From Paraphysomonas bandaiensis (lineage: Eukaryota; Protista; Chrysophyceae), in contig CBFFRP010000616.1 in NCBI GenBank assembly GCA_965644295.1, forward strand, positions 128,859 to 192,858: a DNA stretch of 64,000 nt. Reading direction: 5' to 3'. The notes beneath the pieces are model-generated. The model had not been told where the DNA came from. It saw nothing but the letters and a program-made list of their open reading frames with translations, and did no database searches. The position numbers and the translations under genes were made by a program. Positions 1 to 64,000 of the stretch are shown here, piece after piece; within the stretch, counting starts at the first letter, position 1; each line of letters opens with the position of its first letter.

Positions 1-1788
1 TGTATCTGCAGGATCCAGTTCTTTATATAGTGGTGCCGCTGTGAGTGTATCATCTGGTTCTACAACTGCTGCTAATGAAGCGGGGGGGGGGCTGACTCTA
101 AGTAGTGGTGATGGCAGTATTGGGGGAAATATTGCTATTTCAAGTGGTTTGGGATTAGATGGGCGTGGTGGGGATATCTCGATGGGAGGAGGAGAATCTG
201 GAAGTGTTGGGGGTTCTGTTAATGTCAGGGGTGGTTTCTCCAATGTAGGAATTGGCGGTGATACCACTTTACAAGGCGGTGATTCAGAGTTGTTTGCTGG
301 AGCCGGTCTTGCATTAGCTGGAGGTTCTCAACTCAAAGGTGGTGATGCAGTCTTGTCAAGTGGAGCTGGTGGCGACGTTTCTATCACCACTTCTCTGTCA
401 CTCAGCAGCAGTGGTTCTGTTGCCATTGGTTCAGGGGTTGCATCGAGCGCATCTGGTGGATTAAAATTGGTGACCGGTCAGTCTGAACTGGGGCATTCTG
501 GTGACATTTTATTATCTGTTGGTGGCGGGAACGATGCCGGTGGCATATCACTAGCATCTGGTTCAGGTGTCATTAGCGGAGGAGAAGTCGCCATTGATGG
601 TGGTTCATCAATATCAGGAACTGGTGGCCGAGTGTCTTTGACAAGTGGTATATCCACATCTAGTAGTGGTTCTGGCAGTGTTTCACTGGTGTCATCTGCG
701 TCAACTGGACAATCGGGTTCTGTTACACTTTTATCTGGAACTGCCACTATGTCATCATCTGGTTCAGTATTGATATCATCTGGTGATGGTGCTTCAGCTG
801 GTAGTGTAGCTGTATCTGCAGGATCCAGTTCTTTATATAGTGGTGCCGCTGTGAGTGTATCATCTGGTTCTACAACTGCTGCTAATGAAGCGGGGGGGGG
901 GCTGACTCTAAGTAGTGGTGATGGCAGTATTGGGGGAAATATTGCTATTTCAAGTGGTTTGGGATTAGATGGGCGTGGTGGGGATATCTCGATGGGAGGA
1001 GGAGAATCTGGAAGTGTTGGGGGTTCTGTTAATGTCAGGGGTGGTTTCTCCAATGTAGGAATTGGCGGTGATACCACTTTACAAGGCGGTGATTCAGAGT
1101 TGTTTGCTGGAGCCGGTCTTGCATTAGCTGGAGGTTCTCAACTCAAAGGTGGTGATGCAGTCTTGTCAAGTGGAGCTGGTGGCGACGTTTCTATCACCAC
1201 TTCTCTGTCACTCAGCAGCAGTGGTTCTGTTGCCATTGGTTCAGGGGTTGCATCGAGCGCATCTGGTGGATTAAAATTGGTGACCGGTCAGTCTGAACTG
1301 GGGCATTCTGGTGACATTTTATTATCTGTTGGTGGCGGGAACGATGCCGGTGGCATATCACTAGCATCTGGTTCAGGTGTCATTAGCGGAGGAGAAGTCG
1401 CCATTGATGGTGGTTCATCAATATCAGGAACTGGTGGCCGAGTGTCTTTGACAAGTGGTATATCCACATCTAGTAGTGGTTCTGGCAGTGTTTCACTGGT
1501 GTCATCTGCGTCAACTGGACAATCGGGTTCTGTTACACTTTTATCTGGAACTGCCACTATGTCTTCATCTGGTTCAGTATTGATATCATCTGGTGATGGT
1601 GCTTCAGCTGGTAGTGTAGCTGTATCTGCAGGATCCAGTTCTTTATATAGTGGTGCCGCTGTGAGTGTATCATCTGGTTCTACAACTGCTGCTAATGAAG
1701 CGGGGGGGGGGCTGACTCTAAGTAGTGGTGATGGCAGTATTGGGGGAAATATTGCTATTTCAAGTGGTTTGGGATTAGATGGGCGTGG
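1..1788 (+). repeat. Tandem coding repeat A, 810-nt (270-aa) unit, about 2.2 copies visible, may continue left of the window
   Basis: tgtatctgcaggatccagtt occurs at 1, 811 and 1621, and identity ends at 1788. I noticed one synonymous difference (754 A vs 1564 T). Confidence 0.97.
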
Positions 1789-4700: not shown

Positions 4701-7700
4701 CTGACAGTGTCGGTGCATCTGGAATCATGCAAATATACACTGGGACGTCATCTGGTGAGACCGGGTCGATTAATATTGCTAGTGGGAGTTCTTCTGATGC
4801 CCCAGCTGGTGGTATTTTCATCAAAGGTGGTAGTGGTGCACAATCGGGATCAGATGTAGTTCTTCATGCAGGCAGTGCATCGTCGGATGAAAGCAAAGGT
4901 GGTGGAGTGGATATAACCGCTGGTGATGGCTCGTTCGGCGGTGATGTGGTCATTGGTTCTGGTAATGGTTTCACCAGTAAATCCGGTGGTGCAATAGACA
5001 TCAGATCTGGTGGTGGAGGAGTGGTAGTGAGTAGCGGAGACGCGAGCGTGGATGGTTTGACTGGCGATATTGTGGTCAGCACGGGTTCTGGTACTGCCAC
5101 TGGATCTCTATCTTTGTCAACTGGGCATGGGTTTGGGACCGTTGCTGGTGGCATTGAACTAAGTGTTGGGTCCTCTGCAAGCGGTTCTGGATCGGATATA
5201 TTGTTATCTGCTGGAGATTCTGAGTCAAGTGGTGGCTCTGTATCAGTAGTTGGTGGAAGTAGTGCCACTGCGTCTGGTGGTGATGTTTTGGTGACTGCCG
5301 GTTCAGGTTCAGAATCTGGTCGGGCCGTGCTTCAGACTGCAACGGGTAGTGATAAGGTAACCTTGTCTGATGGTAGGGTGGATGTGCATTCTTCCGGTGG
5401 AATATCATTAAAAGTTCCGGTTTCATCTGATGCTACTTCCACGATGATTGCTTTTGGTTACGAAGACCCATCAACAGGGAATTCCAAGTATGATCTACGA
5501 TTACAGCAGTCGTCTGATTCAACTCGGTCAATCGTTGCTAGTGCTCCTCTCCAAGTGTCCAAGGTTGACTATCCGGCCGATAGTCGCATCAAACGTGATA
5601 TTGACACCGTGGATACAGATTCTCTTTTGCACCGTTTGAATCAGGTCAAGATTCAGAGCTACCGCTACACCAAGGACTGGTTAGAAGCCCGTGATGACAT
5701 AGAGGATATTCGTGTTCGTGGAGTCATTGCTGAGGATTTAGCGCAGGTGTTCCCTGAGCATGTTTCAGTCATCCCGGAATATAAGCTTGAGGATAGAGGT
5801 GTGAGTTTCAAGAATTTTCATCAAGTGGATAAAACATCGTTAATGATGGATATGATTGCTGCTATGCAATCTCAGTCCCGGCGATTTTCCACGACGCCAA
5901 ATTCGGATTCAGAGACTGGAGAGGTCAGAATGAGCTCCAGTTCCTGGTCGGAAGTACATGGTGGCACGGAGGATATGTCTTCTGGAAGTGTTTTGATGAC
6001 TTCTGGCGAGGCTTCTCTGGGCAAGTCTGGCAGTGTGTCGATAAACAGTGGACCTAGTGGTACTCAGGCGGGCAGTGTTCTATTAGCCCCTGGTACTAGT
6101 GGAAATGATGCAGGTGCGGATGTTTCTATTCGCGGTGGTGATTCATTGTCAAGGGTGTCTGTTGGCGGTGATGTGACGCTACGCAGTGGTGGTGGTGGGG
6201 CTGGGAGTGGAGATGTTTATATCTCAACTGACGAAAGCGATCAGGGCACAGGGTCAATAGCACTGATTACTGGTGATAGCGGTGCAGATGCGGCTGGTTC
6301 AGTTTCTCTTTCTGCCGGTTCTGGTGCGTCCGAAATCGGAGCAGGAGTGTCTGTTCACGGTGGTGACTCATTATTGTCTACTGGTACAGGTGGGTTGTTA
6401 TCACTTTCAGCTGGCAATGGTGCCTTGGGTGGGGATATAACAATGGTAAGTGGTGATGGACATACCAGTGGAGGGGGATCTGTATCTATTAGAGGTGGCA
6501 GTAGCCTTTTGTCGTCATTTGGCGGGTCCGTGAATATCGATGGTGGATCGTCTGTTGGGGGTTCTGGAGGGGACATCATTTTACGAAGTGGACGTAATAG
6601 TGGTGATGTAGCGGTTGCTTCGTTATCGATGTCAGGAAGTTCTTCTGGATTGGAGGGGGGAGCTGTACATTTGATGAGTGGTGTAAATTCCGATTTCACA
6701 AGTGGCAAATCCAGTTTTGGGACGTTGTCAACTTTTAGTGACAGTGGGTCTATTGAATTCGCTACTGGTACTTCTCTTTCTGGACTTTCTGGATCTATTC
6801 TGTTAGCTACTGGGGCTTCTGATTCTGGTACAAGTGGTGACGTTCGCATCAATTCTGGTTCTGGTGAGTCAAGTCGCCCGGGCAGTATTACAGTGACTTC
6901 AGGTTCTGGTCAATTAGGTGGTAATGTAGCCGTTTCTGCTGGTGCCGGCTATAGTGGACCTGGGGGATCTGTATCAGCTTTGAGTGGAGGTTCTGATAGT
7001 AGTTCGTATGGTGGCGTCGCAACCTACGGTTCTGGTGAATCGATGGGATCTAGTGGATCTGTGAGTCTTGGAAGTGGCGCTTCTGGTTCTGGTAGCTCTG
7101 GAGGGCTCATTCTATCAACTGGAGATGCGGTTTCTAGAGCTGGTGATATCACAGTGTCTGCGGGCTCTAGCACTTCATCAGAAACTGGCGCTCATGTTGT
7201 TATTCGTGGTGGTGATGTGTCTGGTCCTGGTTCTGTTGGTGGAGATGTGTCTGTATCCAGTGGGGTTGGTTCAACTGGTGGTAGTGTGGATATTCGCAGT
7301 GCTACTGGTATTGAAGGTCTGGGTGGTAGCATCAGGATCGAAGCTCAAGCAAGTGAATTACGCGCAGGATCTTTATCTCTTACAGCAGGGCATTCGAGTA
7401 ATAATGTTGGAGGCGATGTGGATGTCAGCGGGGGTTCAAGTGCATCAGGAGTAGGGGGCACTGTGGTTATTGCAGGTGGTTTGTCAGAAGATAGTTCTGG
7501 CGGTTCGGTGACATTACAGTCCGGTTCTGGATTGCTCGGGAATAGCGGTTCAGTACGTCTCCACTCCGTAGAGTCTTCCTCTGGTAGTTCTGGTAGCATT
7601 GTTTTATCTACTGGTGATGCCGCGGAAGGAATCTCGGGCGACATATCTTTGTCTGTTGGTGATTCGTTATCCCCAGGTCATGTGGACTTACGAGGTGGCT

Positions 7701-10700
7701 CCGGTACTTTGTCTGGTGGAGCTGTTGTTATGCACTCTGGCCAAAGTGTTTCGTCAGACGGGGTTGGTGGCTCTGCTTTAATTGGCTCTGATGTGTCCTC
7801 CGGGCGTAGTGGTGCAGTGTTCTTATCAAGTGGTTCTAGCAGCGCTGATTCGTCTGGGACAATTCGTGTAACGACTGGTGATAGTGCCATGGGCGCAGGT
7901 GATGTTTTGGTATCAGCTGGCCGTAGTGTGTCCGATCATGGGGCGACTGTATCTGTTGTTGGTGGTGACAGCGAGGGTGTTGCTGGTGCAGCCACTGTTG
8001 TTGGTGGCTCTGGTGCTACTGGTGGCGCGTTGAATCTTCATGGCGGCGTTGGAGTTTCAGGTGCTGGTGGATCGGTTGTCGTAGGAGCTGGAGTAGGCGC
8101 TGGAAGTGCTGCAGGTGGTTCTGTCTTGATCGAGGCTGGTAGTTCCACTGGTGAGGGAGATGGTGGTAGCATGTATATGTATGGTGGTGCAGGTTCCGTA
8201 GGAAGTGCTAGTGGTGGATCTGTTACAGTCGGTGGAGGTGAATCAATTGATGGCCTTGGTGGATCTACCTCAGTGACATCTGGGGCATCAAAGACTGGTT
8301 CTTCTGGTTCTTTGTATGTTTCGTCTGCGTCCAGTCCATCATCTGGTCACTTATTTTTATCGACTGGCGCTTCTTCTTCTGGAATAAGTGGCGATATTAA
8401 AATTGCTGTGGGTGATACCATCTCGGCACATTACTCACCGGGTAACTTACATGCTATATCTGGAAGTGGGCCCTCGGGAGGGTATGTTGATATTCGTGGT
8501 GGTCAGGGAACACTACATGGTGGTGGTGGAGTGCTACTCTCTTCTGGTTCTACAACCACAGCAGATAGATATAGCGGTGAGGTTTCTGTCCTTTCTAGTG
8601 CTTCTAATGCAGGAAGTGGAATGGTGTCAGTTGAAAGCGGATCAGGATATAGATCTGGTGCAGTGTTTCTGAAGAGTGGAAATAGTTTAACAGGAACATC
8701 TGGTGATGTTTTGGTATCAGCTGGCCGTAGTGTGTCCGATCATGGGGCGACTGTATCTGTTGTTGGTGGTGACAGCGAGGGTGTTGCTGGTGCAGCCACT
8801 GTTGTTGGTGGCTCTGGTGCTACTGGTGGCGCGTTGAATCTTCATGGCGGCGTTGGAGTTTCAGGTGCTGGTGGATCGGTTGTCGTAGGAGCTGGAGTAG
8901 GCGCTGGAAGTGCTGCAGGTGGTTCTGTCTTGATCGAGGCTGGTAGTTCCACTGGTGAGGGAGATGGTGGTAGCATGTATATGTATGGTGGTGCAGGTTC
9001 CGTAGGAAGTGCTAGTGGTGGATCTGTTACAGTCGGTGGAGGTGAATCAATTGATGGCCTTGGTGGATCTACCTCAGTGACATCTGGGGCATCAAAGACT
9101 GGTTCTTCAGGTGGTATTAGTATTGCTTCCACATCAGGTCAGGTGGATACGGGAGTCGTTGTTATATCTAGTGGCTCCTCGGGTTCAGGAAATAGTGGCG
9201 AGTTGTCATTGCGAACTGGTGAATCTCCAAATGGATTTGCGGGAAATATTTTGTTGTCAGCAGGGACAAGCTCGTATGCCGCTGATCTTGGAAATGCTGG
9301 TGTAACGTTGTCTGCAGGAAGTGGGTTCACTGGTGGTGATGTGTCGGTTGAAGCTGGTGTAGGATTGGTCGGAACTGGTGGTGACTTATTGGCAACATCA
9401 GGGACGGCTGCTTCAGTAACTTCTTCGAGTGGAGCAGTTCATATCCGTTCTTCAACTTCTCCGTTTTCTACAGGCCCCATGATAATCTCTAGTGGGAATG
9501 GTGCCTCGACGGGTGCAGTAAATGTGCAGAGCGGAACTTCCTCAGATGGTTTAGCTGGTGATGTTTTGGTATCAGCTGGCCGTAGTGTGTCCGATCATGG
9601 GGCGACTGTATCTGTTGTTGGTGGTGACAGCGAGGGTGTTGCTGGTGCAGCCACTGTTGTTGGTGGCTCTGGTGCTACTGGTGGCGCGTTGAATCTTCAT
9701 GGCGGCGTTGGAGTTTCAGGTGCTGGTGGATCGGTTGTCGTAGGAGCTGGAGTAGGCGCTGGAAGTGCTGCAGGTGGTTCTGTCTTGATCGAGGCTGGTA
9801 GTTCCACTGGTGAGGGAGATGGTGGTAGCATGTATATGTATGGTGGTGCAGGTTCCGTAGGAAGTGCTAGTGGTGGATCTGTTACAGTCGGTGGAGGTGA
9901 ATCAATTGATGGCCTTGGTGGATCTACCTCAGTGACATCTGGGGCATCAAAGACTGGTTCTTCAGGTGGTATTAGTATTGCTTCCACATCAGGTCAGGTG
10001 GATACGGGAGTCGTTGTTATATCTAGTGGCTCCTCGGGTTCAGGAAATAGTGGCGAGTTGTCATTGCGAACTGGTGAATCTCCAAATGGATTTGCGGGAA
10101 ATATTTTGTTGTCAGCAGGGACAAGCTCGTATGCCGCTGATCTTGGAAATGCTGGTGTAACGTTGTCTGCAGGAAGTGGGTTCACTGGTGGTGATGTGTC
10201 GGTTGAAGCTGGTGTAGGATTGGTCGGAACTGGTGGTGACTTATTGGCAACATCAGGGACGGCTGCTTCAGTAACTTCTTCGAGTGGAGCAGTTCATATC
10301 CGTTCTTCAACTTCTCCGTTTTCTACAGGCCCCATGATAATCTCTAGTGGGAATGGTGCCTCGACGGGTGCAGTAAATGTGCAGAGCGGAACTTCCTCAG
10401 ATGGTTTAGCTGGTGATGTTTTGGTATCAGCTGGCCGTAGTGTGTCCGATCATGGGGCGACTGTATCTGTTGTTGGTGGTGACAGCGAGGGTGTTGCTGG
10501 TGCAGCCACTGTTGTTGGTGGCTCTGGTGCTACTGGTGGCGCGTTGAATCTTCATGGCGGCGTTGGAGTTTCAGGTGCTGGTGGATCGGTTGTCGTAGGA
10601 GCTGGAGTAGGCGCTGGAAGTGCTGCAGGTGGTTCTGTCTTGATCGAGGCTGGTAGTTCCACTGGTGAGGGAGATGGTGGTAGCATGTATATGTATGGTG

Positions 10701-55700: not shown

Positions 55701-58700
55701 TGTCTTTGTTGACTGCTAATGCTGGATCATCTGGTGTGAGTGGTCAATTGGTGTTGAGTACTGGCTTCGCATCCTTAGGTAACAGTGGTTCTATATATAT
55801 TGGATCTTCTTCTGCATCTAGTGGTCGTGGTGGTTCAGTGTATGTGACAGTAGGGTCCGGCAACAGTGGTTCTGGTGGTGAGTTGGTGTTGTCAGCTGGT
55901 ACTTCATCTTCCCAGAGCGGTGGACGGCTCTCTATTGTGTCTGGTTATGGTTCCTCAAGAAGTAGTGGGGCCATATCACTACAAACAGCTCCTTCAGGAT
56001 CTTTAGGAGTTAGTGGTCATATTATTTTAAGCACCGGCAGCTCAAGTCGGGGGAACACCGGATCTCTATACATTGGCAGTGGAACTGCGTCAAGTGGTCG
56101 TGGTGGTTCAGTGTATGTGACAGTAGGATCAGGTGACAGTGGATCAGGTGGTGAGTTGATGTTGTCAGCTGGCGAGTCATCATCGGAGAGTGGTGGTCGT
56201 TTGACAATTGTAACTGGTTTCAGTTCAGAGCGATCCAGTGGAGCATTGTCCTTGTTGACTGCTAATGCTGGATCATCTGGTGTGAGTGGTCAATTGGTGT
56301 TGAGTACTGGTACTTCTAGTAGAGGCAACAGTGGTTCATTGTACATTGGCAGTGGAACTGCGTCAAGTGGTCGTGGTGGTTCAGTGTATGTGACAGTAGG
56401 ATCAGGTGACAGTGGATCAGGTGGAGAGTTGATGTTGTCAGCTGGCGAGTCATCATCGGAGAGTGGTGGTCGTTTGACAATTGTTACTGGTTACAGTTCA
56501 GAGCGATCCAGTGGAGCATTGTCCTTGTTGACTGCTAATGCTGGATCATCAGGTGTGAGTGGCCAATTGGTGTTGAGTACTGGTACTGCTAGTAAGGGCA
56601 ACAGTGGTTCGTTGTACATTGGCAGTGGATCTGGTGCAAGTGGTCGTGGTGGTTCAGTGTATGTGACAGTAGGATCCGGCAACAGTGGGTCAGGTGGTGA
56701 GTTGATGTTGTCAGCTGGCGAGTCATCATCGGAGAGTGGTGGTCGTTTGACAATTGTTACTGGTTCTGGTTCTCGTGGTAGTAGTGGAGCATTGTCTTTG
56801 TTGACTGCCAATGCTGGATCATCTGGTGTGAGTGGTCAATTGGTGTTGAGTACTGGTACTGCTAGTCGAGGCAATAGTGGTTCGTTGTACATTGGCAGTG
56901 GATCTGGTGCAAGTGGTCGTGGTGGTTCAGTGTATGTGACAGTAGGATCCGGCAACAGTGGATCAGGTGGTGAGTTGATGTTGTCAGCTGGCGAGTCATC
57001 ATCGGAGAGTGGTGGTCGTTTGACAATTGTTTCTGGTTATGGTTCTCGTGGCAGTAGTGGAGCATTGTCTTTGTTGACTGCCAATGCTGGATCATCTGGT
57101 GTGAGTGGTCAATTGGTGTTGAGTACTGGTACTTCTAGTAGAGGCAACAGTGGTTCGTTGTACATTGGTAGTGGATCTGGTGCAAGTGGTCGTGGTGGTT
57201 CAGTGTATGTGACAGTAGGATCTGGCAACAGTGGATCAGGTGGTGAGTTGATGTTGTCAGCTGGCGAGTCATCATCGGAGAGTGGTGGTCGTTTGACAAT
57301 TGTAACTGGTTTCAGTTCAGAGCGATCCAGTGGAGCATTGTCTTTGTTGACTGCTAATGCTGGATCATCTGGTGTGAGTGGTCAATTGGTGTTGAGTACT
57401 GGTACTTCTAGTCGAGGCAACAGTGGTTCGTTGTACATTGGCAGTGGATCTGCATCAAGTGGTCGTGGTGGTTCAGTGTATGTGACAGTAGGATCCGGCA
57501 ACAGTGGATCAGGTGGTGAGTTGATGTTGTCAGCTGGTGAGTCATCATCGGAGAGTGGTGGTCGTTTGACAATTATAACTGGTTTCAGTTCAGAGCGATC
57601 CAGTGGAGCATTGTCTTTGTTGACTGCTAATGCTGGATCATCTGGTGTGAGTGGTCAATTGGTGTTGAGTACTGGTACTGCTAGTAGAGGCAACAGTGGT
57701 TCGTTGTACATTGGCAGTGGATCTGCATCAAGTGGTCGTGGTGGTTCAGTGTATGTGACAGTAGGATCCGGCAACAGTGGATCAGGTGGTGAGTTGATGT
57801 TGTCAGCTGGCGAGTCATCATCGGAGAGTGGTGGTCGTTTGACAATTGTAACTGGTTTCAGTTCAGAGCGATCCAGTGGAGCATTGTCTTTGTTGACTGC
57901 TAATGCTGGATCATCTGGTGTGAGTGGTCAATTGGTGTTGAGTACTGGTACTGCTAGTAAGGGCAACAGTGGTTCGTTGTACATTGGCAGTGGATCTGGT
58001 GCAAGTGGTCGTGGTGGTTCAGTGTATGTGACAGTAGGATCTGGCAACAGTGGATCAGGTGGTGAGTTGATGTTGTCAGCTGGCGAGTCATCATCGGAGA
58101 GTGGTGGTCGTTTGACAATAGTAACTGGTTCTGGGTCTGTGGGAAGTAGTGGAGCGTTGTCTTTGTTGACTGCTAATGCTGGATCATCTGGTGTGAGTGG
58201 TCAATTGGTGTTGAGTACCGGTACTTCTAGTCGAGGCAACAGTGGTTCGTTGTATATTGGTAGTGGATCTGCATCAAGTGGTCGTGGTGGGTCAGTGTAT
58301 GTGACAGTAGGATCTGGCAACAGTGGATCAGGTGGTGAGTTGGCATTATCTGCTGGTACTTCATCTTCCCAGAGTGGTGGTCGTTTGACAATTGTTTCTG
58401 GTTATGGTTCTCGTGGCAGCAGTGGAGCATTGTCTTTGTTGACTGCTAATGCTGGATCATCTGGTGTGAGTGGTCAATTGGTGTTGAGTACTGGAACTTC
58501 TAGTCGAGGCAACAGTGGTTCGTTGTACATTGGCAGTGGATCTGCATCAAGTGGTCGTGGTGGTTCAGTGTATGTGACAGTAGGATCTGGCAACAGTGGA
58601 TCAGGTGGAGAGTTGATGTTGTCAGCTGGCGAGTCATCATCGGAGAGTGGTGGTCGTTTGACAATAGTTACTGGTTTCAGTTCAGAGCGATCTAGTGGAG

Positions 58701-61700
58701 CATTGTCTTTGTTGACTGCTAATGCTGGATCATCAGGTGTGAGTGGTCAATTGGTGTTGAGTACTGGAACTGCTAGTAAGGGCAACAGTGGTTCGTTGTA
58801 TATTGGTAGTGGATCTGCATCAAGTGGTCGTGGTGGTTCAGTGTATGTGACAGTAGGATCCGGCAACAGTGGATCAGGTGGTGAGTTGATGTTGTCAGCT
58901 GGCGAGTCATCATCGGAGAGTGGTGGTCGTTTGACAATAGTTACTGGTTCTGGAGCTGTGGGAAGTAGTGGAGCATTGTCTTTGTTGACTGCTAATGCAG
59001 GATCATCTGGTGTGAGTGGTCAATTGGTGTTGAGTACTGGTACTTCTAGTCGAGGCAACAGTGGTTCGTTGTATATTGGTAGTGGATCTGCATCAAGTGG
59101 TCGTGGTGGTTCAGTGTATGTGACAGTAGGATCTGGCAACAGTGGATCAGGTGGTGAGTTGGCATTATCTGCTGGTACTTCATCTTCCCAGAGTGGTGGT
59201 CGTTTGACAATTGTTTCTGGTTATGGTTCTCGTGGCAGCAGTGGAGCATTGTCTTTGTTGACTGCTAATGCTGGATCATCTGGTGTGAGTGGTCAATTGG
59301 TGTTGAGTACTGGAACTTCTAGTCGAGGCAACAGTGGTTCGTTGTACATTGGTAGTGGATCTGGTGCAAGTGGTCGTGGTGGTTCAGTGTATGTGACAGT
59401 AGGATCTGGCAACAGTGGATCAGGTGGTGAGTTGGCATTATCTGCAGGTACTTCATCTTCCCAGAGTGGTGGTCGTTTGACAATTGTAACTGGTTTCAGT
59501 TCAGAGCGATCCAGTGGATCATTGTCCTTGTTGACTGCTAATGCTGGATCATCTGGTGTGAGTGGTCAATTGGTGTTGAGTACTGGTACTTCTAGTAAGG
59601 GCAACAGTGGTTCGTTGTACATTGGCAGTGGATCTGGTGCAAGTGGTCGTGGTGGTTCAGTGTATGTGACAGTAGGATCAGGTGACAGTGGATCAGGTGG
59701 TGAGTTGATGTTGTCAGCTGGCGAGTCATCCTCGGAGAGTGGTGGTCGTTTGACAGTTGTAAGTGGATATGGTTCTCGTGGTAGCAGTGGAGCATTGTCT
59801 TTGTTGACTGCTAATGCTGGATCATCTGGTGTGAGTGGTCAATTGGTGTTGAGTACTGGTACTTCTAGTCGAGGCAACAGTGGTTCGTTGTACATTGGTA
59901 GTGGATCTGCATCAAGTGGTCGTGGTGGTTCAGTGTATGTGACAGTAGGATCTGGCAACAGTGGATCAGGTGGTGAGTTGATGTTGTCAGCTGGCGAGTC
60001 ATCATCGGAGAGTGGCGGTCGTTTGACAATTGTTACTGGTTCTGGGTCTGAGGGAAGTAGTGGAGCATTGTCCTTGTTGACTGCTAATGCTGGATTATCT
60101 GGTGTGAGTGGTCAATTGGTGTTGAGTACTGGTACTTCTAGTAGAGGCAACAGTGGTTCGTTGTACATTGGTAGTGGATCTGGTGCAAGTGGTCGTGGTG
60201 GTTCAGTGTATGTGACAGTAGGATCCGGCAACAGTGGATCAGGTGGTGAGTTGATGTTGTCAGCTGGCGAGACATCATCGGAGAGTGGTGGTCGTTTGAC
60301 AATTGTAACTGGTTCTGGATCTGTGGGTAGTAGTGGAGCATTGTCTTTGTTGACTGCTAATGCTGGATCATCTGGTGTGAGTGGTCAATTGGTGTTGAGT
60401 ACTGGTACTTCTAGTAAGGGCAACAGTGGTTCGTTGTACATTGGCAGTGGATCTGCATCAAGTGGTCGTGGTGGTTCAGTGTATGTGACAGTAGGATCAG
60501 GTGACAGTGGATCAGGTGGTGAGTTGATGTTGTCAGCTGGCGAGTCATCATCGGAGAGTGGTGGTCGCTTGACAATTGTAACTGGTTCTGGATCTGTGGG
60601 TAGTAGTGGAGCGCTGTCTTTGTTGACTGCTAATGCTGGATCATCTGGTGTGAGTGGTCAATTGGTGTTGAGTACTGGTACTTCTAGTCGAGGCAACAGT
60701 GGTTCATTGTACATTGGCAGTGGATCTGGTGCAAGTGGTCGTGGTGGTTCAGTGTATGTGACAGTAGGATCAGGCAACAGTGGATCAGGTGGTGAGTTGA
60801 TGTTGTCTGCTGGCGAGTCATCATCGGAGAGTGGTGGTCGTTTGACAATTGTCACTGGTTATAGTTCGGAGCGATCCAGTGGATCATTGTCTTTGTTGAC
60901 TGCTAATGCTGGATCATCTGGTGTGAGTGGTCAATTGGTGTTGAGTACTGGTACTTCTAGTCGAGGCAACAGTGGTTCATTGTACATTGGCAGTGGATCT
61001 GCATCAAGTGGTCGTGGTGGTTCAGTGTATGTGACAGTAGGATCCGGCAACAGTGGTTCTGGTGGTGAGTTGATGTTGTCAGCTGGCGAGTCATCATCGG
61101 AGAGTGGTGGTCGTTTGACAATAGTTACTGGTTCTGGAGCTGTGGGAAGTAGTGGAGCATTGTCTTTGTTGACTGCTAATGCTGGATCATCTGGTGTGAG
61201 TGGTCAATTGGTGTTGAGTACTGGTACTTCTAGTCGAGGCAACAGTGGTTCGTTGTATATTGGTAGTGGATCTGCATCAAGTGGTCGTGGTGGTTCAGTG
61301 TATGTGACAGTAGGATCTGGCAACAGTGGATCAGGTGGTGAGTTGGCATTATCTGCTGGTACTTCATCTTCCCAGAGTGGTGGTCGTTTGACAATTGTAA
61401 GTGGTTATGGTTCTCGTGGCAGTAGTGGAGCATTGTCTTTGTTGACTGCTAATGCAGGATCATCTGGTGTGAGTGGTCAATTGGTGTTGAGTACTGGTAC
61501 TTCTAGTCGAGGCAACAGTGGTTCGTTGTACATTGGCAGTGGATCTGGTGCAAGTGGTCGTGGTGGTTCAGTGTATGTGACAGTAGGATCTGGCAACAGT
61601 GGATCAGGTGGTGAGTTGGCATTATCTGCTGGTACTTCATCTTCCCAGAGTGGTGGTCGTTTGGCAATAGTTACTGGTTTCAGTTCAGAGCGATCCAGTG

Positions 61701-64000
61701 GAGCGTTGTCTTTGCTGACTGCTAATGCTGGATCATCTGGTGTGAGTGGTCAATTGGTGTTGAGTACTGGTACTTCTAGTCGAGGCAACAGTGGTTCGTT
61801 GTACATTGGCAGTGGATCTGGTTCAAGTGGTCGTGGTGGTTCAGTGTATGTGACAGTAGGATCTGGCAACAGTGGTTCTGGTGGTGAGTTGGCATTGTCT
61901 GCTGGTACTTCATCTTCCCAGAGTGGTGGCCGTTTGACAATTGTAAGTGGTTATGGTTCTCGTGGTAGCAGTGGAGCATTGTCTTTGTTGACTGCCAATG
62001 CTGGATCATCTGGTGTGAGTGGTCAATTGGTGTTGAGTACTGGTACTTCTAGTCGAGGCAACAGTGGTTCGTTGTACATTGGTAGTGGATCTGCATCAAG
62101 TGGTCGTGGTGGTTCAGTGTATGTGACAGTAGGATCTGGCAACAGTGGATCAGGTGGTGAGTTGATGTTGTCAGCTGGCGAGTCATCATCGGAGAGTGGC
62201 GGTCGTTTGACAATTGTTACTGGTTCTGGGTCTGAGGGAAGTAGTGGAGCATTGTCCTTGTTGACTGCTAATGCTGGATTATCTGGTGTGAGTGGTCAAT
62301 TGGTGTTGAGTACTGGTACTTCTAGTCGAGGCAACAGTGGTTCGTTGTACATTGGCAGTGGATCTGCATCAAGTGGTCGTGGTGGTTCAGTGTATGTGAC
62401 AGTAGGATCTGGCAACAGTGGATCTGGTGGTGAGTTGGCACTATCTGCTGGTACTTCATCTTCCCAGAGTGGTGGTCGTTTGACAATTGTAAGTGGTTAT
62501 GGTTCTCGTGGTAGCAGTGGAGCATTGTCTTTGTTGACTGCTAATGCTGGATCATCTGGTGTGAGTGGTCAATTGGTGTTGAGTACTGGTACTTCTAGTC
62601 GAGGCAACAGTGGTTCGTTGTACATTGGCAGTGGATCTGGTGCAAGTGGTCGTGGTGGTTCAGTGTATGTGACAGTGGGGTCCGGTGACAGTGGATCAGG
62701 TGGTGAGTTGATGTTGTCAGCTGGCGAGTCATCATCGGAGAGTGGTGGTCGTTTAACAATTGTCACTGGTTATAGTTCAGAGCGATCCAGTGGAGCATTG
62801 TCCTTGTTGACTGCTAATGCTGGATCATCTGGTGTGAGTGGTCAATTGGTGTTGAGTACTGGTACTTCCAGTCGAGGCAACAGTGGTTCATTGTATATTG
62901 GCAGTGGATCTGGTGCAAGTGGTCGTGGTGGTTCAGTGTATGTGACAGTAGGATCTGGCAACAGTGGATCAGGTGGTGAGTTGGTGCTGTCAGCTGGCGA
63001 GACATCATCGGAGAGTGGTGGTCGTTTGACAATTGTAACTGGTTTCAGTTCAGAGCGATCCAGTGGAGCATTGTCCTTGTTGACTGCTAATGCGGGATCA
63101 TCTGGTGTGAGTGGTCAATTGGTGTTGAGTACTGGTACTTCTAGTCGAGGCAACAGTGGTTCGTTGTACATTGGTAGTGGATCTGGTGCAAGTGGTCGTG
63201 GTGGTTCAGTGTATGTGACAGTAGGATCAGGCAACAGTGGATCAGGTGGTGAGTTGATGTTGTCAGCTGGCGAGTCATCATCGGAGAGTGGTGGTCGTTT
63301 GACAATTGTTACTGGTTCTGGATCTGTGGGAAGTAGTGGAGCATTGTCTTTGTTGACTGCTAATGCAGGATCATCTGGTGTGAGTGGTCAATTGGTGTTG
63401 AGTACTGGTACTTCTAGTCGAGGCAACAGTGGTTCGTTGTACATTGGCAGTGGATCTGCATCAAGTGGTCGTGGTGGTTCAGTGTATGTGACAGTAGGAT
63501 CTGGCAACAGTGGATCAGGTGGTGAGTTGATGTTGTCAGCTGGCGAGTCATCCTCGGAGAGTGGTGGTCGTTTGACAATTGTAACTGGTTTCAGTTCAGA
63601 GCGATCCAGTGGAGCATTGTCTTTGTTGACTGCCAATGCTGGATCATCTGGTGTGAGTGGTCAATTGGTGTTGAGTACTGGTACTTCTAGTCGAGGCAAC
63701 AGTGGTTCGTTGTACATTGGTAGTGGATCTGGTGCAAGTGGTCGTGGTGGTTCAGTGTATGTGACAGTAGGATCTGGCAACAGTGGATCAGGTGGTGAGT
63801 TGATGTTGTCAGCTGGCGAGTCATCCTCGGAGAGTGGTGGTCGTTTGACAATAGTTACTGGTTCTGGAGCTGTGGGTAGTAGTGGAGCATTGTCTTTGTT
63901 GACTGCCAACGCTGGATCATCTGGTGTGAGTGGTCAATTGGTGTTGAGTACTGGTACTTCCAGTCGAGGCAACAGTGGTTCGTTGTATATTGGTAGTGGA
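2..64000 (+). CDS. Internal fragment (at least 21,333 aa, open at both ends) of a giant Gly/Ser-rich beta-repeat fibre-like protein with internal Peptidase S74/ICA domains
   Basis: Frame +2 reads VSAGSSSLYSGAAVSVSSGSTTAANEAGGGLTLSSGDG... at base 2 and ...SRGNSGSLYIGSG at base 64000. Every stretch I translated by hand is stop-free and in the same frame. All + strand ORFs in the supplied track start at multiples of 3 (frame +3) and none is in frame +2, although frame +2 has an ATG at 182 and many later. A stop in frame +2 would have produced a listed ORF. All internal duplication offsets are multiples of 3. Confidence 0.96.
4021..4326 (+). repeat. Dispersed coding repeat B, copy 1 (about 306 nt)
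   Basis: Near-identical to 7204-7509 (offset 3183 nt = 1061 codons) with a few substitutions. The shadow ORFs 3855..4271 and 7068..7454 share their C-terminal text. Confidence 0.93.
5573..5890 (+). other. Peptidase S74 / intramolecular chaperone (ICA) domain, copy 1, catalytic Ser replaced by Ala (predicted non-cleaving)
   Basis: PADSRIKRDIDTVDTDSLLHRLNQVKIQSYRYTKDWLEARDDIEDIRVRGVIAEDLAQVFPEHVSVIPEYKLEDRGVSFKNFHQVDKTSLMMDMIAAMQSQSRRFS. It carries the family motifs (S)DxRxK-x-x-I, Y-x-Y, G-x-IA(QE)-x-x-x-x-x-PE-x-V and a terminal helix. Ala codon GCC at 5576-5578, Lys at 5591-5593. Confidence 0.9.
7204..7509 (+). repeat. Dispersed coding repeat B, copy 2
   Basis: Matches 4021-4326 from tcgtggtggtgatg to ggcggttcggt. 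Confidence 0.93.
7898..10821 (+). repeat. Coding repeat C: a block of about 407 nt in four copies (7898, 8702, 9557, 10412), the last three inside an 855-nt (285-aa) tandem of about 2.5 copies
   Basis: ggtgatgttttggtatcagctggccgtagtgtgtccgatcat recurs at offsets 804, 855 and 855. Shadow ORFs 8842/9697 and 9139/9994 are identical and 855 apart. Confidence 0.96.
12677..19140 (+). repeat. Large intragenic duplication D, copy 1 (6464 nt)
   Basis: Near-identical to 19223-25686 (offset 6546 nt = 2182 codons). Shadow ORF pairs such as 13207/19753 and 14746/21292 confirm the offset. Confidence 0.97.
19223..25686 (+). repeat. Large intragenic duplication D, copy 2
   Basis: Starts at agtggtagtgctacactacgtact and ends after gagtc(a/t)attggtgg. 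I noticed about ten substitutions relative to copy 1. An 82-nt unique linker lies at 19141-19222. Confidence 0.97.
26502..28285 (+). repeat. Third, partial copy of duplication D (1784 nt)
   Basis: Matches 22473-24256 (offset 4029) and 15927-17710. Shadow ORFs 16180, 22726 and 26755 are identical. Confidence 0.96.
36149..36466 (+). other. Peptidase S74 / intramolecular chaperone (ICA) domain, copy 2, intact Ser-Lys dyad (predicted autocleavage site)
   Basis: SSDERIKRDIQPVDENSILHRLKQVQLQSYRYTEEWLGVRDDVQDVRVRGVIAQELAKVFPEHVKVIPEYTLEDKNITFKNFHQVDKTSLMMDLIAAIQEQAKRFS. Canonical SDxRxK (Ser 36152-36154, Lys 36167-36169) and GVIAQE. About 70% identical to copy 1 without gaps (74/106 by hand count). 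Confidence 0.93.
37793..38579 (+). repeat. Coding repeat E, copy 1 (787 nt)
   Basis: Near-identical to 39200-39986 (offset 1407 nt = 469 codons). Confidence 0.95.
39200..39986 (+). repeat. Coding repeat E, copy 2
   Basis: Runs from ggttcaggtggaaat to gatatttctagcggtg, matching 37793-38579. Confidence 0.95.
41502..46530 (+). repeat. Interrupted tandem coding repeat F, 810-nt (270-aa) unit
   Basis: The unit start cgacaggcgacagttcggattca is at 41502, 42312, 43122, 43917, 44727 and 46371, with a variant start near 45561. Unique inserts lie at about 43447-43696 and 44759-45570. Shadow ORFs 41715, 42525, 44130 and 45774 are identical. Confidence 0.95.
48400..49855 (+). repeat. Degenerate 91-92-aa units leading into array G
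   Basis: The (T/S)-(A/S)-NAG motif has its Asn codon at 49160, 49436, 49712 and 49985 (spacings 276, 276, 273). An older unit LLTANYGKGGLSGEIQLSTGKSSRGDTGALMMSTG...SIAMNVGSGNSG lies near 48416. Confidence 0.85.
49856..64000 (+). repeat. Tandem coding array G, 273-nt (91-aa) unit, about 52 copies, running off the right edge
   Basis: Unit ANAGSSGVSGQLVLSTGTSSRGNSGSLYIGSGSASSGRGGSVYVTVGSGNSGSGGELxLSAG(TSSSQ/ESSSE)SGGRLTIV(S/T)G(YGSRG/FSSER/SGSVG)SSGALSLLT. Phase is exact, e.g. shadow ORF ends at 53287 and 63661 differ by 38 x 273. Confidence 0.98.

What the first reader, a model, noticed from the sequence alone, without database searches (positions are those of the whole stretch)
2..64000. Hidden stop-free reading frame spanning all 64 kb: a protein of at least 21,333 aa that the ORF caller misses
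Seen: frame +2 is open across the whole window, with no gene start, stop or non-repeat interruption other than the two ICA regions. Known: the largest described proteins are titin (about 35,000 aa) and PKZILLA-1 (about 45,000 aa), both from intron-containing genes. Inference: this fragment alone is roughly 2 MDa per chain and both ends lie outside the window, so the full protein may rank among the largest known. If the host is a eukaryote, this is an exceptionally long single coding exon. Gene callers and low-complexity masking would tend to drop or fragment it.
Basis: partly seen in the sequence, partly recalled or inferred. Interest (0 to 1): 0.92.

Follow-up and report, generated by a model that had tools for sequence, protein, structure and literature searches.

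The report
Giant self-cleaving Ser/Gly-rich fibre gene
The whole 64-kb window is one real, stop-free coding frame for a huge serine/glycine-rich repeat protein, interrupted only by two phage-type "intramolecular chaperone" domains that probably trimerise it and cut it; it is an extreme member of an undescribed protein family found mostly in microbial eukaryotes.

Summary
Frame +2 has 0 stops in 21,333 codons, where about 1,120 are expected and the other frames have 281-1,652. It is coding: GC3 is 0.29 against GC2 0.65, all internal duplications are multiples of 3 nt, pN/pS is 0.27 among the 273-nt repeats, and the two non-repeat islands are bona fide Peptidase_S74 (ICA) domains. The rest is a 25% Ser, 24% Gly shaft with a conserved ~15-residue strand-loop period and no other Pfam domain. 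ICA2 keeps the Ser-Lys dyad (S12051/K12056), so self-cleavage before S12051 is predicted. ICA1 has Ala at the nucleophile position, equivalent to the uncleavable MyRF S587A. Relatives have the same shaft-ICA-shaft layout. They occur in oomycetes, in contigs with eukaryotic housekeeping genes and introns, and in aquatic metagenomes. Complete ones are about 2,800-5,200 aa and start with a signal-peptide-like exon and Cys-rich modules. Best reading: the middle of a secreted, trimeric beta-structured fibre polyprotein. The ORF tool misses the frame only because it skips ORFs that run off the ends. The product is probably cut into pieces of at least 1.10 and 0.85 MDa. Larger predicted proteins (85,804 aa) exist. 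The source organism, gene ends, expression and assembly correctness could not be checked.

The parts
2..64000 (+). Single stop-free reading frame (21,333 codons), open at both window ends. It is the internal part of a giant Ser/Gly-rich fibre polyprotein gene.
   Evidence: 0 stops against about 1,120 expected. GC1/2/3 are 0.53/0.65/0.29. pN/pS is 0.27 in the repeats.
2..5368 (+). Shaft module A (at least 1,789 aa), Ser/Gly-rich with a ~15-aa period. It begins with about 2.2 copies of an 810-nt (270-aa) unit, nt ~1-1760.
   Evidence: Repeat map and duplicate identity. 15-aa autocorrelation.
5369..5896 (+). Neck plus ICA1 (aa ~1790-1965). This Peptidase_S74 domain has Ala at the nucleophile position (A1859, nt 5576-5578) and the Lys retained (K1864, nt 5591-5593). 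It is predicted to be a non-cleaving trimerisation node.
   Evidence: Pfam E 4.6e-10, 40.1 bits against a cut-off of 22. Motif YPADSRIKRDI. MyRF S587A is not cleaved. Ala variants recur in the family.
5897..35953 (+). Shaft module B (about 10,000 aa), Ser/Gly-rich. It contains 855-nt units (~7.9-10.8 kb), a 6,546-nt tandem duplication (12711-19110 and 19257-25656, 99.84% identical), a third partial copy (26530-28259), and unique sequence from 28.3 to 35.9 kb.
   Evidence: No Pfam domain. No relative among PDB sequences.
35954..36481 (+). Neck plus ICA2 (aa ~11985-12160). This Peptidase_S74 domain has an intact Ser-Lys dyad: S12051 (nt 36152-36154) and K12056 (nt 36167-36169).
   Evidence: Pfam E 3.9e-14, 53.1 bits. 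PDB sequence hit to MyRF ICA 7dc3, E 7.7e-9. AlphaFold pLDDT about 90 over the ICA. Foldseek hits to 7dc3 (E 2.5e-8), 3gw6, 4uw8 and 3gud.
36149..36154 (+). Predicted autocleavage site, between S12050 and S12051. This is the bond equivalent to MyRF P586|S587.
   Evidence: The alignment to 7dc3 places S12051 on MyRF residue 587 and K12056 on K592. Cleavage site and mutant data come from PMC8326128. Cleavage here is inferred, not shown.
36482..49834 (+). Shaft module C, first part. It is Ser/Gly-rich, with a 1,407-nt duplication (37821-38550 and 39228-39957) and 795-1,644-nt repeats (41521-46374).
49835..64000 (+). Shaft module C, tandem array of about 52 copies of a 273-nt unit. Each unit is 91 aa, i.e. 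six ~15-aa strand-loop units. The array runs off the window end.
   Evidence: TRF: period 273, 51.9 copies, 91% matches, 0% indels. Diversity by codon position is 7.0/4.3/15.2 and pN/pS is 0.27.

Best explanation
The window is the interior of one very large protein-coding gene, most likely a single exon of a microbial eukaryote. The gene encodes a secreted fibre polyprotein. About 98% of the sequence is a Ser/Gly-rich shaft built from roughly 1,400 units of ~15 residues, each a short alternating-hydrophobic beta-strand plus a Gly/Ser loop. Two intramolecular chaperone auto-processing (ICA, Peptidase_S74) domains interrupt the shaft. As in phage tail fibres and MyRF, each ICA domain is proposed to trimerise and so bring three chains into register, nucleating the folding of the adjacent shaft into a trimeric beta-structured rod. 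ICA2 has the Ser-Lys dyad and is predicted to cut the chain before S12051 once trimerised. That would separate an upstream fibre of at least 12,050 aa from a downstream piece of at least 9,283 aa that keeps the ICA trimer at its N-terminus, as MyRF's C-terminal fragment does. ICA1 has Ala in place of the nucleophile and is proposed to be a permanent, non-cleaving registration node inside the fibre. Shown: the open frame, the coding constraint, the ICA identity, fold and dyad status, the 15-aa period, and the family architecture in relatives. Inferred: trimerisation, cleavage, secretion, rod-like fold, eukaryotic host and an extracellular structural or adhesive role.
For: Open frame and coding constraint. 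In addition, ICA1 against ICA2 gives pS 0.82 (saturated) and pN 0.29. All internal duplication offsets are multiples of 3 (810, 855, 1407, 1605, 1644, 4029, 6546, 10575, 273). ICA identity rests on Pfam, PHROG tail-fibre C-termini, the MyRF ICA 7dc3 by sequence and by fold. Dyad logic comes from PMC8326128: cleavage at P586|S587, with S587A and K592A uncleaved. Family: 824 hits to the neck+ICA query, most with S/G shaft on both sides of the ICA. Of the ICA domains aligned at the dyad, 111 are Ser/Lys and 24 lack the Ser, about half of which also lack the Lys. The 15-aa period is present in every relative's shaft. Relatives L002 and L003 lie next to HSP70, ZIP and PUB genes, and L001 next to a TTL gene. 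L002 and L003 have a signal-peptide-like first exon, two Cys-rich modules, then shaft, ICA(Ser), ICA(Ala), shaft and a ~120-aa non-repeat C-terminal domain, with no TM segment. Named relatives are oomycetes. Introns occur in L009, L023 and L029. Only one distant hit (33%) was found in 185,579 prokaryotic genomes. There is no TM segment in the window, which holds a single Cys and a strong net negative charge.
Against: The shaft fold is unresolved. The AlphaFold monomer model of 5 x 91 aa has pLDDT 44, and its Foldseek hits are not significant. No PDB sequence relative of the shaft exists. No trimer prediction was possible. The source organism is unknown and the window is absent from all three searchable DNA collections, so there is no direct evidence for a signal peptide, the gene ends, transcription or translation. 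A marine subgroup of relatives sits in compact, intron-free ORF blocks without recognisable cellular genes, so a viral or mobile-element origin is possible for part of the family. Long, nearly identical duplications could be mis-assembled.
Confidence: 0.6

Rival explanations
1. The gene is viral or prokaryotic, not a cellular eukaryotic gene. It would be a fibre gene of a giant virus, a polinton-like virus or endogenous viral element, or a bacterium.
For: ICA domains are typical of phage tail fibres. They are common at the C-termini of fibre proteins of polinton-like viruses of protists, which reach 3.9k aa (PMC12220804). The marine relatives L018-L031 lie in compact same-strand ORF blocks with no Pfam or PHROG hits. 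The window has no intron or other gene by which to judge.
Against: There was no confirmed relative and no exact DNA match in IMG/VR. Only one distant hit was found in 185,579 prokaryotic genomes. The relatives with the clearest gene context sit beside HSP70, TTL, ZIP and PUB genes and have introns. The best solved-structure match is eukaryotic MyRF, not a phage protein. A 64-kb gene exceeds whole polinton-like virus genomes of 14-40 kb.
Confidence: 0.15
2. It is a real giant secreted protein, but the shaft is an extended, disordered, O-glycosylated, mucin- or sericin-like chain. In that case the ICA domains serve only for oligomerisation and cleavage.
For: The composition is 25% Ser, 24% Gly and 5.5% Thr. 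The AlphaFold model of the shaft has low confidence. The shaft has no PDB relative.
Against: Pro is only 0.5% of residues, whereas mucins are Pro-rich. A regular ~15-aa alternation of hydrophobic residues is conserved across all relatives. The model places a strand every ~15 residues. Purifying selection acts on the repeat sequence. In all studied cases ICA domains chaperone beta-helical stalks.
Confidence: 0.15
3. The length is an assembly artefact. The gene is real, but repeat arrays and kb-scale duplications were over-expanded or chimerically joined, so the true ORF is much shorter or is interrupted.
For: The duplicated segments are 99.8-100% identical over 0.7-6.4 kb. The 52-copy 273-nt array runs off the window end. 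Complete relatives are only about 2,800-5,200 aa.
Against: About 27 kb of the window is unique sequence in the same frame. The 273-nt copies differ by 3-25% from their consensus, mostly at third positions, as expected for real diverged copies. The 6.4-kb copies differ at 10 sites. Short-read assemblies collapse or truncate such genes rather than expand them: the relatives' contigs L004 and L005 end inside the ORF.
Confidence: 0.15
4. It is non-coding satellite-like DNA that happens to lack stops in one frame.
For: 58% of the window is repeated. There is no expression evidence.
Against: The window has 0 stops against about 1,120 expected, including 27 kb of unique sequence. It contains two conserved, confidently folding protein domains. 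Variation is in excess at third codon positions and pN/pS is 0.27. All duplication offsets are in frame. Hundreds of protein-level relatives exist.
Confidence: 0.01

Closest known systems
[quoted passage not shown]
   Same: It is the best sequence and fold match to ICA2. The ICA is internal, preceded by a beta-helical stalk and followed by more protein. The Ser-Lys dyad is at equivalent positions. After cleavage the ICA would stay on the C-terminal fragment.
   Different: The window has no NDT80 DNA-binding domain and no TM segment. The flanks are thousands of residues of Ser/Gly shaft. There are several ICA domains per chain, and some are naturally dyad-less.
Phage tail-fibre and tailspike C-terminal ICA domains (endosialidase K1F 3gw6, T5 pb1 4uw8, phi29 gp12 3gud; PHROG 1980, 5481 and others)
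   Same: The domain family is the same, PF13884. The presumed role is also the same: trimerising and folding an upstream fibrous beta-structure, then self-cleaving.
   Different: In phages the ICA is the extreme C-terminus and is discarded as a ~150-aa fragment. Here it is internal and followed by more than 9,000 aa. The context is not phage, and the protein is about 10-20 times longer than any phage fibre.
Fibre proteins of polinton-like viruses of protists with a C-terminal Peptidase_S74 domain (PMC12220804)
   Same: They are large modular fibre proteins with ICA domains, associated with eukaryotes.
   Different: They are up to 3.9k aa, with a single C-terminal ICA and laminin_G_3, collagen or adenovirus-fibre modules. 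None of these modules is present here.
Unnamed eukaryotic/environmental 'shaft-ICA-shaft' family (L001-L005, L023; Aphanomyces euteiches CAK4417441.1; Nothophytophthora BBJ28_00019545)
   Same: The neck+ICA is 43-64% identical. The members share the S/G shaft with the 15-aa period on both sides of the ICA, and a mix of Ser-type and Ala-type ICA domains. This is the family the window belongs to.
   Different: Complete members are about 2,800-5,200 aa and their ICA domains are clustered about 300 aa apart. The window has at least 21,333 aa with about 10,100 aa between its two ICA domains. The family is annotated only as hypothetical or 'tail fiber domain-containing', and I found no paper describing it.
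Other giant proteins (titin, PKZILLA-1, Omnitrophota giant proteins of up to 85,804 aa)
   Same: The size class is similar.
   Different: There is no homology and no shared domains. Those proteins are built from Ig/FN3 domains, PKS modules, or TM plus SecA-like domains. Titin and the PKZILLAs are encoded by multi-exon genes.
15-residue-repeat fibrous folds: adenovirus fibre triple beta-spiral, and YadA-type left-handed beta-roll heads of trimeric autotransporters (from general knowledge, not tested)
   Same: The repeat length is ~14-15 residues with alternating hydrophobic residues and Gly-rich turns, in obligate trimers.
   Different: No sequence or fold match was obtained. This is an analogy only.

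Membership tests
Peptidase_S74 / ICA domain (PF13884) | Match to the family profile above the curated threshold | tested here: met
   ICA1 scores 40.1 bits and ICA2 53.1 bits against a cut-off of 22. Both were found again in the 5,000-aa scans.
Peptidase_S74 / ICA domain (PF13884) | Ser-Lys catalytic dyad (endoNF S911/K916, MyRF S587/K592) | tested here: met
   ICA2 has S12051 and K12056, which align to MyRF 587 and 592. ICA1 does not meet this feature: it has A1859 with K1864 retained.
Peptidase_S74 / ICA domain (PF13884) | ICA fold | tested here: met
   The AlphaFold model has pLDDT about 90 over ICA2. Foldseek gives 7dc3 at E 2.5e-8 (TM on target 0.65), and also 3gw6, 4uw8 and 3gud.
Peptidase_S74 / ICA domain (PF13884) | Trimerisation-dependent autocleavage | not testable with these tools
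   This needs expression of neck+ICA2 and dyad mutants, analysed by SDS-PAGE and mass spectrometry.
Peptidase_S74 / ICA domain (PF13884) | Upstream trimeric beta-helical stalk | tested here: inconclusive
   The neck is modelled as strands with pLDDT 70-85. The shaft monomer model has pLDDT 44. No multimer prediction was available.
MYRF-type membrane-bound transcription factors | NDT80/PhoG DNA-binding domain N-terminal to the ICA | tested here: not met
   No Pfam domain other than PF13884 was found in 20,000 aa.
MYRF-type membrane-bound transcription factors | Transmembrane segment C-terminal to the ICA | tested here: not met
   No TM-like stretch occurs in the 9,283 aa after ICA2; the best 19-aa Kyte-Doolittle window scores 1.71 and is Gly/Ala/Val shaft. 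The true C-terminus lies outside the window.
Phage tail fibre / tailspike | ICA at the extreme C-terminus, in a phage structural gene context | tested here: not met
   Both ICA domains are internal. There was no match in IMG/VR.
Eukaryotic/environmental shaft-ICA-shaft family (unnamed) | S/G-rich shaft with ~15-aa period on both sides of a neck+ICA module related to the family | tested here: met
Eukaryotic/environmental shaft-ICA-shaft family (unnamed) | N-terminal signal-peptide-like exon, Cys-rich (PSI-like) modules, and a non-repeat C-terminal domain | not testable with these tools
   These are seen in L002, L003, L009 and L023. The window's gene ends lie outside the window and the source contig was not found.
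Mucin-like / silk-like low-complexity secreted proteins | Pro/Thr/Ser-rich disordered repeats (mucins), or (GA)n/(GS)n crystalline motifs (silks) | tested here: not met
   Pro is 0.5% of residues. The repeats are 13-17-aa strand-loop units with alternating V/I/L, not dipeptide runs.

The most novel reading that the evidence does not exclude
A protist makes a fibre in the micrometre range from a single exon of at least 64 kb, one of the largest proteins and longest coding exons of any eukaryote. At about 1,400 units of 15 aa, the fibre would be roughly 0.7 um if each unit is a 4.8-A beta-roll coil, and up to about 1.8 um if it is spiral-like. Domesticated phage-type ICA domains are scattered along the chain and play two distinct roles. 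Dyad-less copies act as permanent pegs that keep three highly repetitive chains in register. Catalytic copies cut the polyprotein into separate fibres. This would be a new assembly principle for giant repetitive trimeric proteins.
Probability: 0.3. Interest if true: 0.85.

Novelty: new variant of a known kind. Interest (0 to 1): 0.68.

Why it matters
If the assembly and expression hold up, this is among the largest predicted eukaryotic proteins and probably the longest uninterrupted coding exon on record for a eukaryote. It comes from a family that databases label only as 'hypothetical' and that short-read assemblies systematically truncate. It extends the phage-derived ICA self-processing module, so far studied in phage fibres and in MyRF, to giant secreted polyproteins with several ICA copies per chain, some of them natural dyad-less variants. 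That suggests a testable answer to how three extremely long, low-complexity chains find and keep their register. It also offers candidate genes for unidentified extracellular fibres, hairs or coats of oomycetes and other protists. Finally, it shows that ORF listers which skip end-open frames, together with low-complexity masking, can hide the largest genes.

Tried and rejected
1. Extending the window. Exact-match DNA searches with a 32-mer from ICA2 in metagenome contigs, genome contigs and viral contigs found nothing. Look-ups of two antisense ORFs as possibly called genes also found nothing. The organism and the gene ends therefore stay unknown.

2. Searching for giant relatives. A search for ICA relatives of 5,500-17,500 aa gave no hit.

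3. Viral origin. The IMG/VR protein-pattern scan gave no confirmed relative.

4. Shaft fold. A single-sequence AlphaFold model of 5 x 91 aa had low confidence, and its Foldseek hits (Ag43, TibA, tailspikes, E > 1) were not significant. phmmer and a profile search of the shaft against PDB sequences found nothing.

5. Hits rejected as spurious or compositional. P0051 is an unrelated tandem repeat. P0054 is a Cyanophora REJ-domain protein that matched only outside the ICA.

6. Organism of the relatives. The assemblies GCA_024449685.1, GCA_024449875.1 and GCA_024449835.1 appear in no searchable paper.

7. Literature. Searches for a described eukaryotic S/G-rich ICA family found none. The first of these was poorly targeted. 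The Saprolegnia hooked-hair paper gives no protein identity for the hairs, so I make no link to them.

8. RNA genes. No tRNA and no Rfam family was found in the window.

9. MYRF or phage tail-fibre membership was rejected on architecture (see the membership test).
Full report
**Observation**

Frame +2 of the window (nt 2-64000) has no stop codon in 21,333 codons. The other five frames have 281-1,652 stops and no open stretch longer than 1,482 nt. From base composition, about 1,120 stops would be expected. This is not the trivial result of one stop-free repeat unit copied many times: 42% of positions start a unique 20-mer and there are 38,234 distinct 20-mers. The mechanical ORF list shows only antisense shadow ORFs, because it does not list ORFs that run off the ends. 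That is the whole reason the frame looked hidden. The window contains no tRNA and no Rfam family. I do not take the window for human sequence.

**Is it coding?**

Several independent lines say yes.

- GC content by codon position is 0.53/0.65/0.29, with a consistent preference for T-ending codons.
- Every internal duplication offset is a multiple of three: 273, 810, 855, 1407, 1605, 1644, 4029, 6546 and 10575 nt.
- Among the 51 full copies of the 273-nt unit, nucleotide diversity by codon position is 7.0/4.3/15.2 and pN/pS is 0.27.
- The two non-repeat islands are old paralogues. They are 59% identical in protein, with synonymous sites saturated (pS 0.82) and pN only 0.29.
- The protein has hundreds of relatives.

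The satellite-DNA reading is therefore rejected.

**Anatomy**

The translation is 25% Ser and 24% Gly, with 0.5% Pro, a single Cys and a strong net negative charge (D+E 1,460, K+R 750). It has no TM-like segment. Hydrophobic residues recur with a basic period of about 15 residues (range 13-17): a short alternating h-x-h-x strand followed by a Gly/Ser loop. There are about 1,400 such units.

On top of this sit higher-order repeats:

- 270-aa units at the 5' end.
- 285-aa units at about 7.9-10.8 kb.
- A 6,546-nt tandem duplication (12711-19110 and 19257-25656, 10 mismatches in 6,400 nt) with a third partial copy at 26530-28259.
- A 1,407-nt duplication and 795-1,644-nt repeats between 37.8 and 46.4 kb.
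- About 52 copies of a 273-nt (91-aa, six-unit) repeat from 49835 to the window end.

Only two stretches fall below 30% Ser+Gly. [quoted passage not shown] Nothing else in the 20,000 aa scanned matches Pfam. The shaft has no relative among PDB sequences.

**The ICA domains**

ICA2 (aa ~12051-12155) matches the MyRF ICA crystal structure 7dc3 by sequence (E 7.7e-9). An AlphaFold model built with 26 relatives reaches pLDDT about 90 over the domain and 70-85 over the preceding neck. Foldseek returns 7dc3 (E 2.5e-8), followed by the ICA domains of endosialidase K1F (3gw6), the phage T5 L-shaped fibre (4uw8) and phi29 gp12 (3gud). PHROG hits are all C-terminal parts of tail-fibre families.

The MyRF structure paper shows cleavage between P586 and S587. 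S587A and K592A abolish cleavage, and these residues correspond to S911 and K916 of the endosialidase (PMC8326128). In the alignment, S12051 and K12056 of ICA2 fall on those positions, so ICA2 is predicted to cut the chain between S12050 and S12051 (nt 36149-36154).

ICA1 reads YPADSRIKRDI. It has Ala (A1859) exactly where the nucleophile should be, with the Lys retained. This is a natural equivalent of the uncleavable S587A.

The Ala variant is not an isolated accident. Among the ICA domains of the retrieved relatives that align at the dyad, 111 carry Ser/Lys and 24 lack the Ser, mostly with Ala; about half of those have also lost the Lys. Relatives with several ICA domains per chain combine a Ser-type copy with Ala- or Asp-type copies. 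P0001 has S, A and D copies, and P0002 has S and A.

**Relatives and likely host**

A full HMMER scan of 1.84 billion representative proteins with the neck+ICA2 segment gave 824 hits, 28 of them below 1e-30. Most are fragments from short contigs. Wherever flanks exist, they are Ser/Gly shaft on both sides of the ICA, and every shaft examined has the 15-aa period.

The named relatives are oomycetes, Aphanomyces euteiches and Nothophytophthora. The relatives in three large, highly fragmented NCBI assemblies lie next to eukaryotic housekeeping genes: HSP70, ZIP and PUB in L002 and L003, and a TTL gene in L001. In L002 and L003 the gene starts with a signal-peptide-like exon, judged by eye because no predictor was available. 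This is followed by two Cys-rich PSI-like modules and a conserved domain in other frames, which implies introns. Then come about 2,400 aa of shaft, an ICA(Ser), about 300 aa, an ICA(Ala), a further 1,500-1,900 aa of shaft, and a ~120-aa non-repeat C-terminal domain. There is no TM segment. The same N-terminal modules appear in L009 and L023, and several metagenome relatives have introns.

The closest relative is L005, with 64% identity over the ICA. It is truncated by its contig at the ICA end, and its S/G sequence continues upstream in another frame. The A. euteiches contig is one open S/G frame from end to end. So such genes are routinely cut short by assembly.

Only one distant hit (33%) turned up in 185,579 prokaryotic species genomes, and none in IMG/VR. 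A microbial eukaryote is therefore the most likely host, but this is inferred from relatives. The window itself was not found in any searchable collection, and no near-identical protein exists in the databases; the best identity is 57-64%.

One marine subgroup (L018-L031) has an intron-free ORF of about 2,800 aa, set in a compact block of unrecognisable ORFs. This keeps a viral or mobile-element origin open for part of the family.

**Mechanism proposed**

By analogy with phage fibres and MyRF, each ICA domain trimerises and brings three chains into register. The adjacent shaft then folds into a trimeric beta-structured rod. ICA2 then cleaves before S12051. This yields an upstream fibre of at least 12,050 aa (at least 1.10 MDa per chain) and a downstream product of at least 9,283 aa (at least 0.85 MDa) that retains the ICA trimer at its N-terminus. 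ICA1, lacking the nucleophile, would stay as an uncut registration node within the upstream fibre. The signal-peptide-like start, the Cys-rich modules and the absence of a TM segment in relatives point to secretion and an extracellular structural or adhesive role.

Shown here: the frame, the constraint, the domain identity, fold and dyad status, the period, and the family architecture. Inferred: trimerisation, cleavage, secretion, the rod shape and the role.

The shaft fold itself is unresolved. The monomer model has pLDDT 44 with strands every ~15 residues, and its fold matches are not significant. A length estimate of about 0.7-1.8 um follows only from assumed rises of 4.8-13 A per unit, taken from general knowledge of beta-rolls and beta-spirals.

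**Comparison with what is known**

The window works like an ICA-assisted trimeric fibre. It is not a member of the MYRF family, because it has no NDT80 domain and no TM segment. It is not a phage tail fibre either, because its ICA domains are internal and the context is not phage.

Polinton-like viruses of protists carry fibre proteins of up to 3.9k aa with one C-terminal ICA and other modules (PMC12220804). None of those modules occurs here.

I found no paper describing the eukaryotic shaft-ICA-shaft family, within the limits of the open-access library.

Even so, at least 21,333 codons without an intron would be exceptional for a eukaryote.

**Verdict**

This is a new variant of a known kind: an extreme, multi-ICA member of an uncharacterised eukaryote-associated fibre family.

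The main caveats are:

- The organism and the gene ends are unknown.
- There is no expression evidence.
- The assembly of the near-identical duplications is unverified.
- The shaft fold is unresolved.

Noticed in passing
window minus strand, e.g. 37654-38967, 14746-15969, 21292-22515, 45967-47151: Long antisense 'shadow' ORFs of up to 437 aa lie in frame -2, which has only 281 stops, one per 273-nt unit in the tail array. They are the only ORFs the mechanical lister reports. They look like a by-product of the GGT/AGT-rich sense codons.
   Followed up: partly
window 12711-19110, 19257-25656 and 26530-28259: This is a very recent in-frame segmental triplication. Two 6.4-kb copies differ at 10 sites (5 synonymous, 5 not), and a third 1.7-kb partial copy has 0-2 mismatches. 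It reflects either ongoing expansion or gene conversion, or an assembly risk.
   Followed up: partly
window 1-64000: GC skew (+0.24 to +0.41) and AT skew (-0.14 to -0.28) are uniformly strong along the whole window. Codon composition (G-rich first and second positions, T-rich third) appears to account for this, so it is not a replication signal.
   Followed up: partly
L018, L019, L020, L027, L028, L031 (marine metagenome/TARA contigs of 14-63 kb): These nearly identical loci carry an intron-free S/G-rich ORF of about 2,800 aa with two ICA domains near its N-terminus. It lies in a compact same-strand block of ORFs, including one of 1,709 aa, with no Pfam or PHROG match. This may be a virus or mobile element of a marine microbe.
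   Followed up: partly
P0006 (RYG63291.1, 3-kb contig): This protein is annotated 'tail fiber domain-containing protein [archaeon]' in a MAG, yet it is 53% identical over the neck+ICA2 query and has S/G shaft on both sides. It is probably a mis-binned eukaryotic fragment.
   Followed up: no
L023 10192-10310; L009 and L029 throughout: In some relatives the gene is split by short introns, one of them inside the ICA domain. In L009 and L029 exons alternate between frames. The window, by contrast, has no interruption in 64 kb.
   Followed up: partly
L002 5118-5576, L003 2238-2900, L009 2745-3419, L023 46-864: The family has a conserved N-terminal region: two Cys-rich PSI-like modules followed by a 'CPxSY..GNL.V.AD' domain that runs straight into the shaft. 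The L002 stretch, the only one scanned, gave no Pfam match.
   Followed up: partly
L002 ~16900-17449, L003 ~17400-18192: A conserved non-repeat C-terminal domain of about 120 aa ends the relatives' shafts, with no Pfam hit (only the L002 copy was scanned). Its position recalls the distal knob of viral fibres.
   Followed up: no
window 49835-64000: The 273-nt array has higher-order structure. 819-nt triplets align at 88-96% identity, and exact 20-mer matches peak at multiples such as 1092, 1365 and 2184 nt. Two adjacent copies (about 55.6-56.1 kb) are markedly more diverged, at 75-82% identity to the consensus.
   Followed up: no
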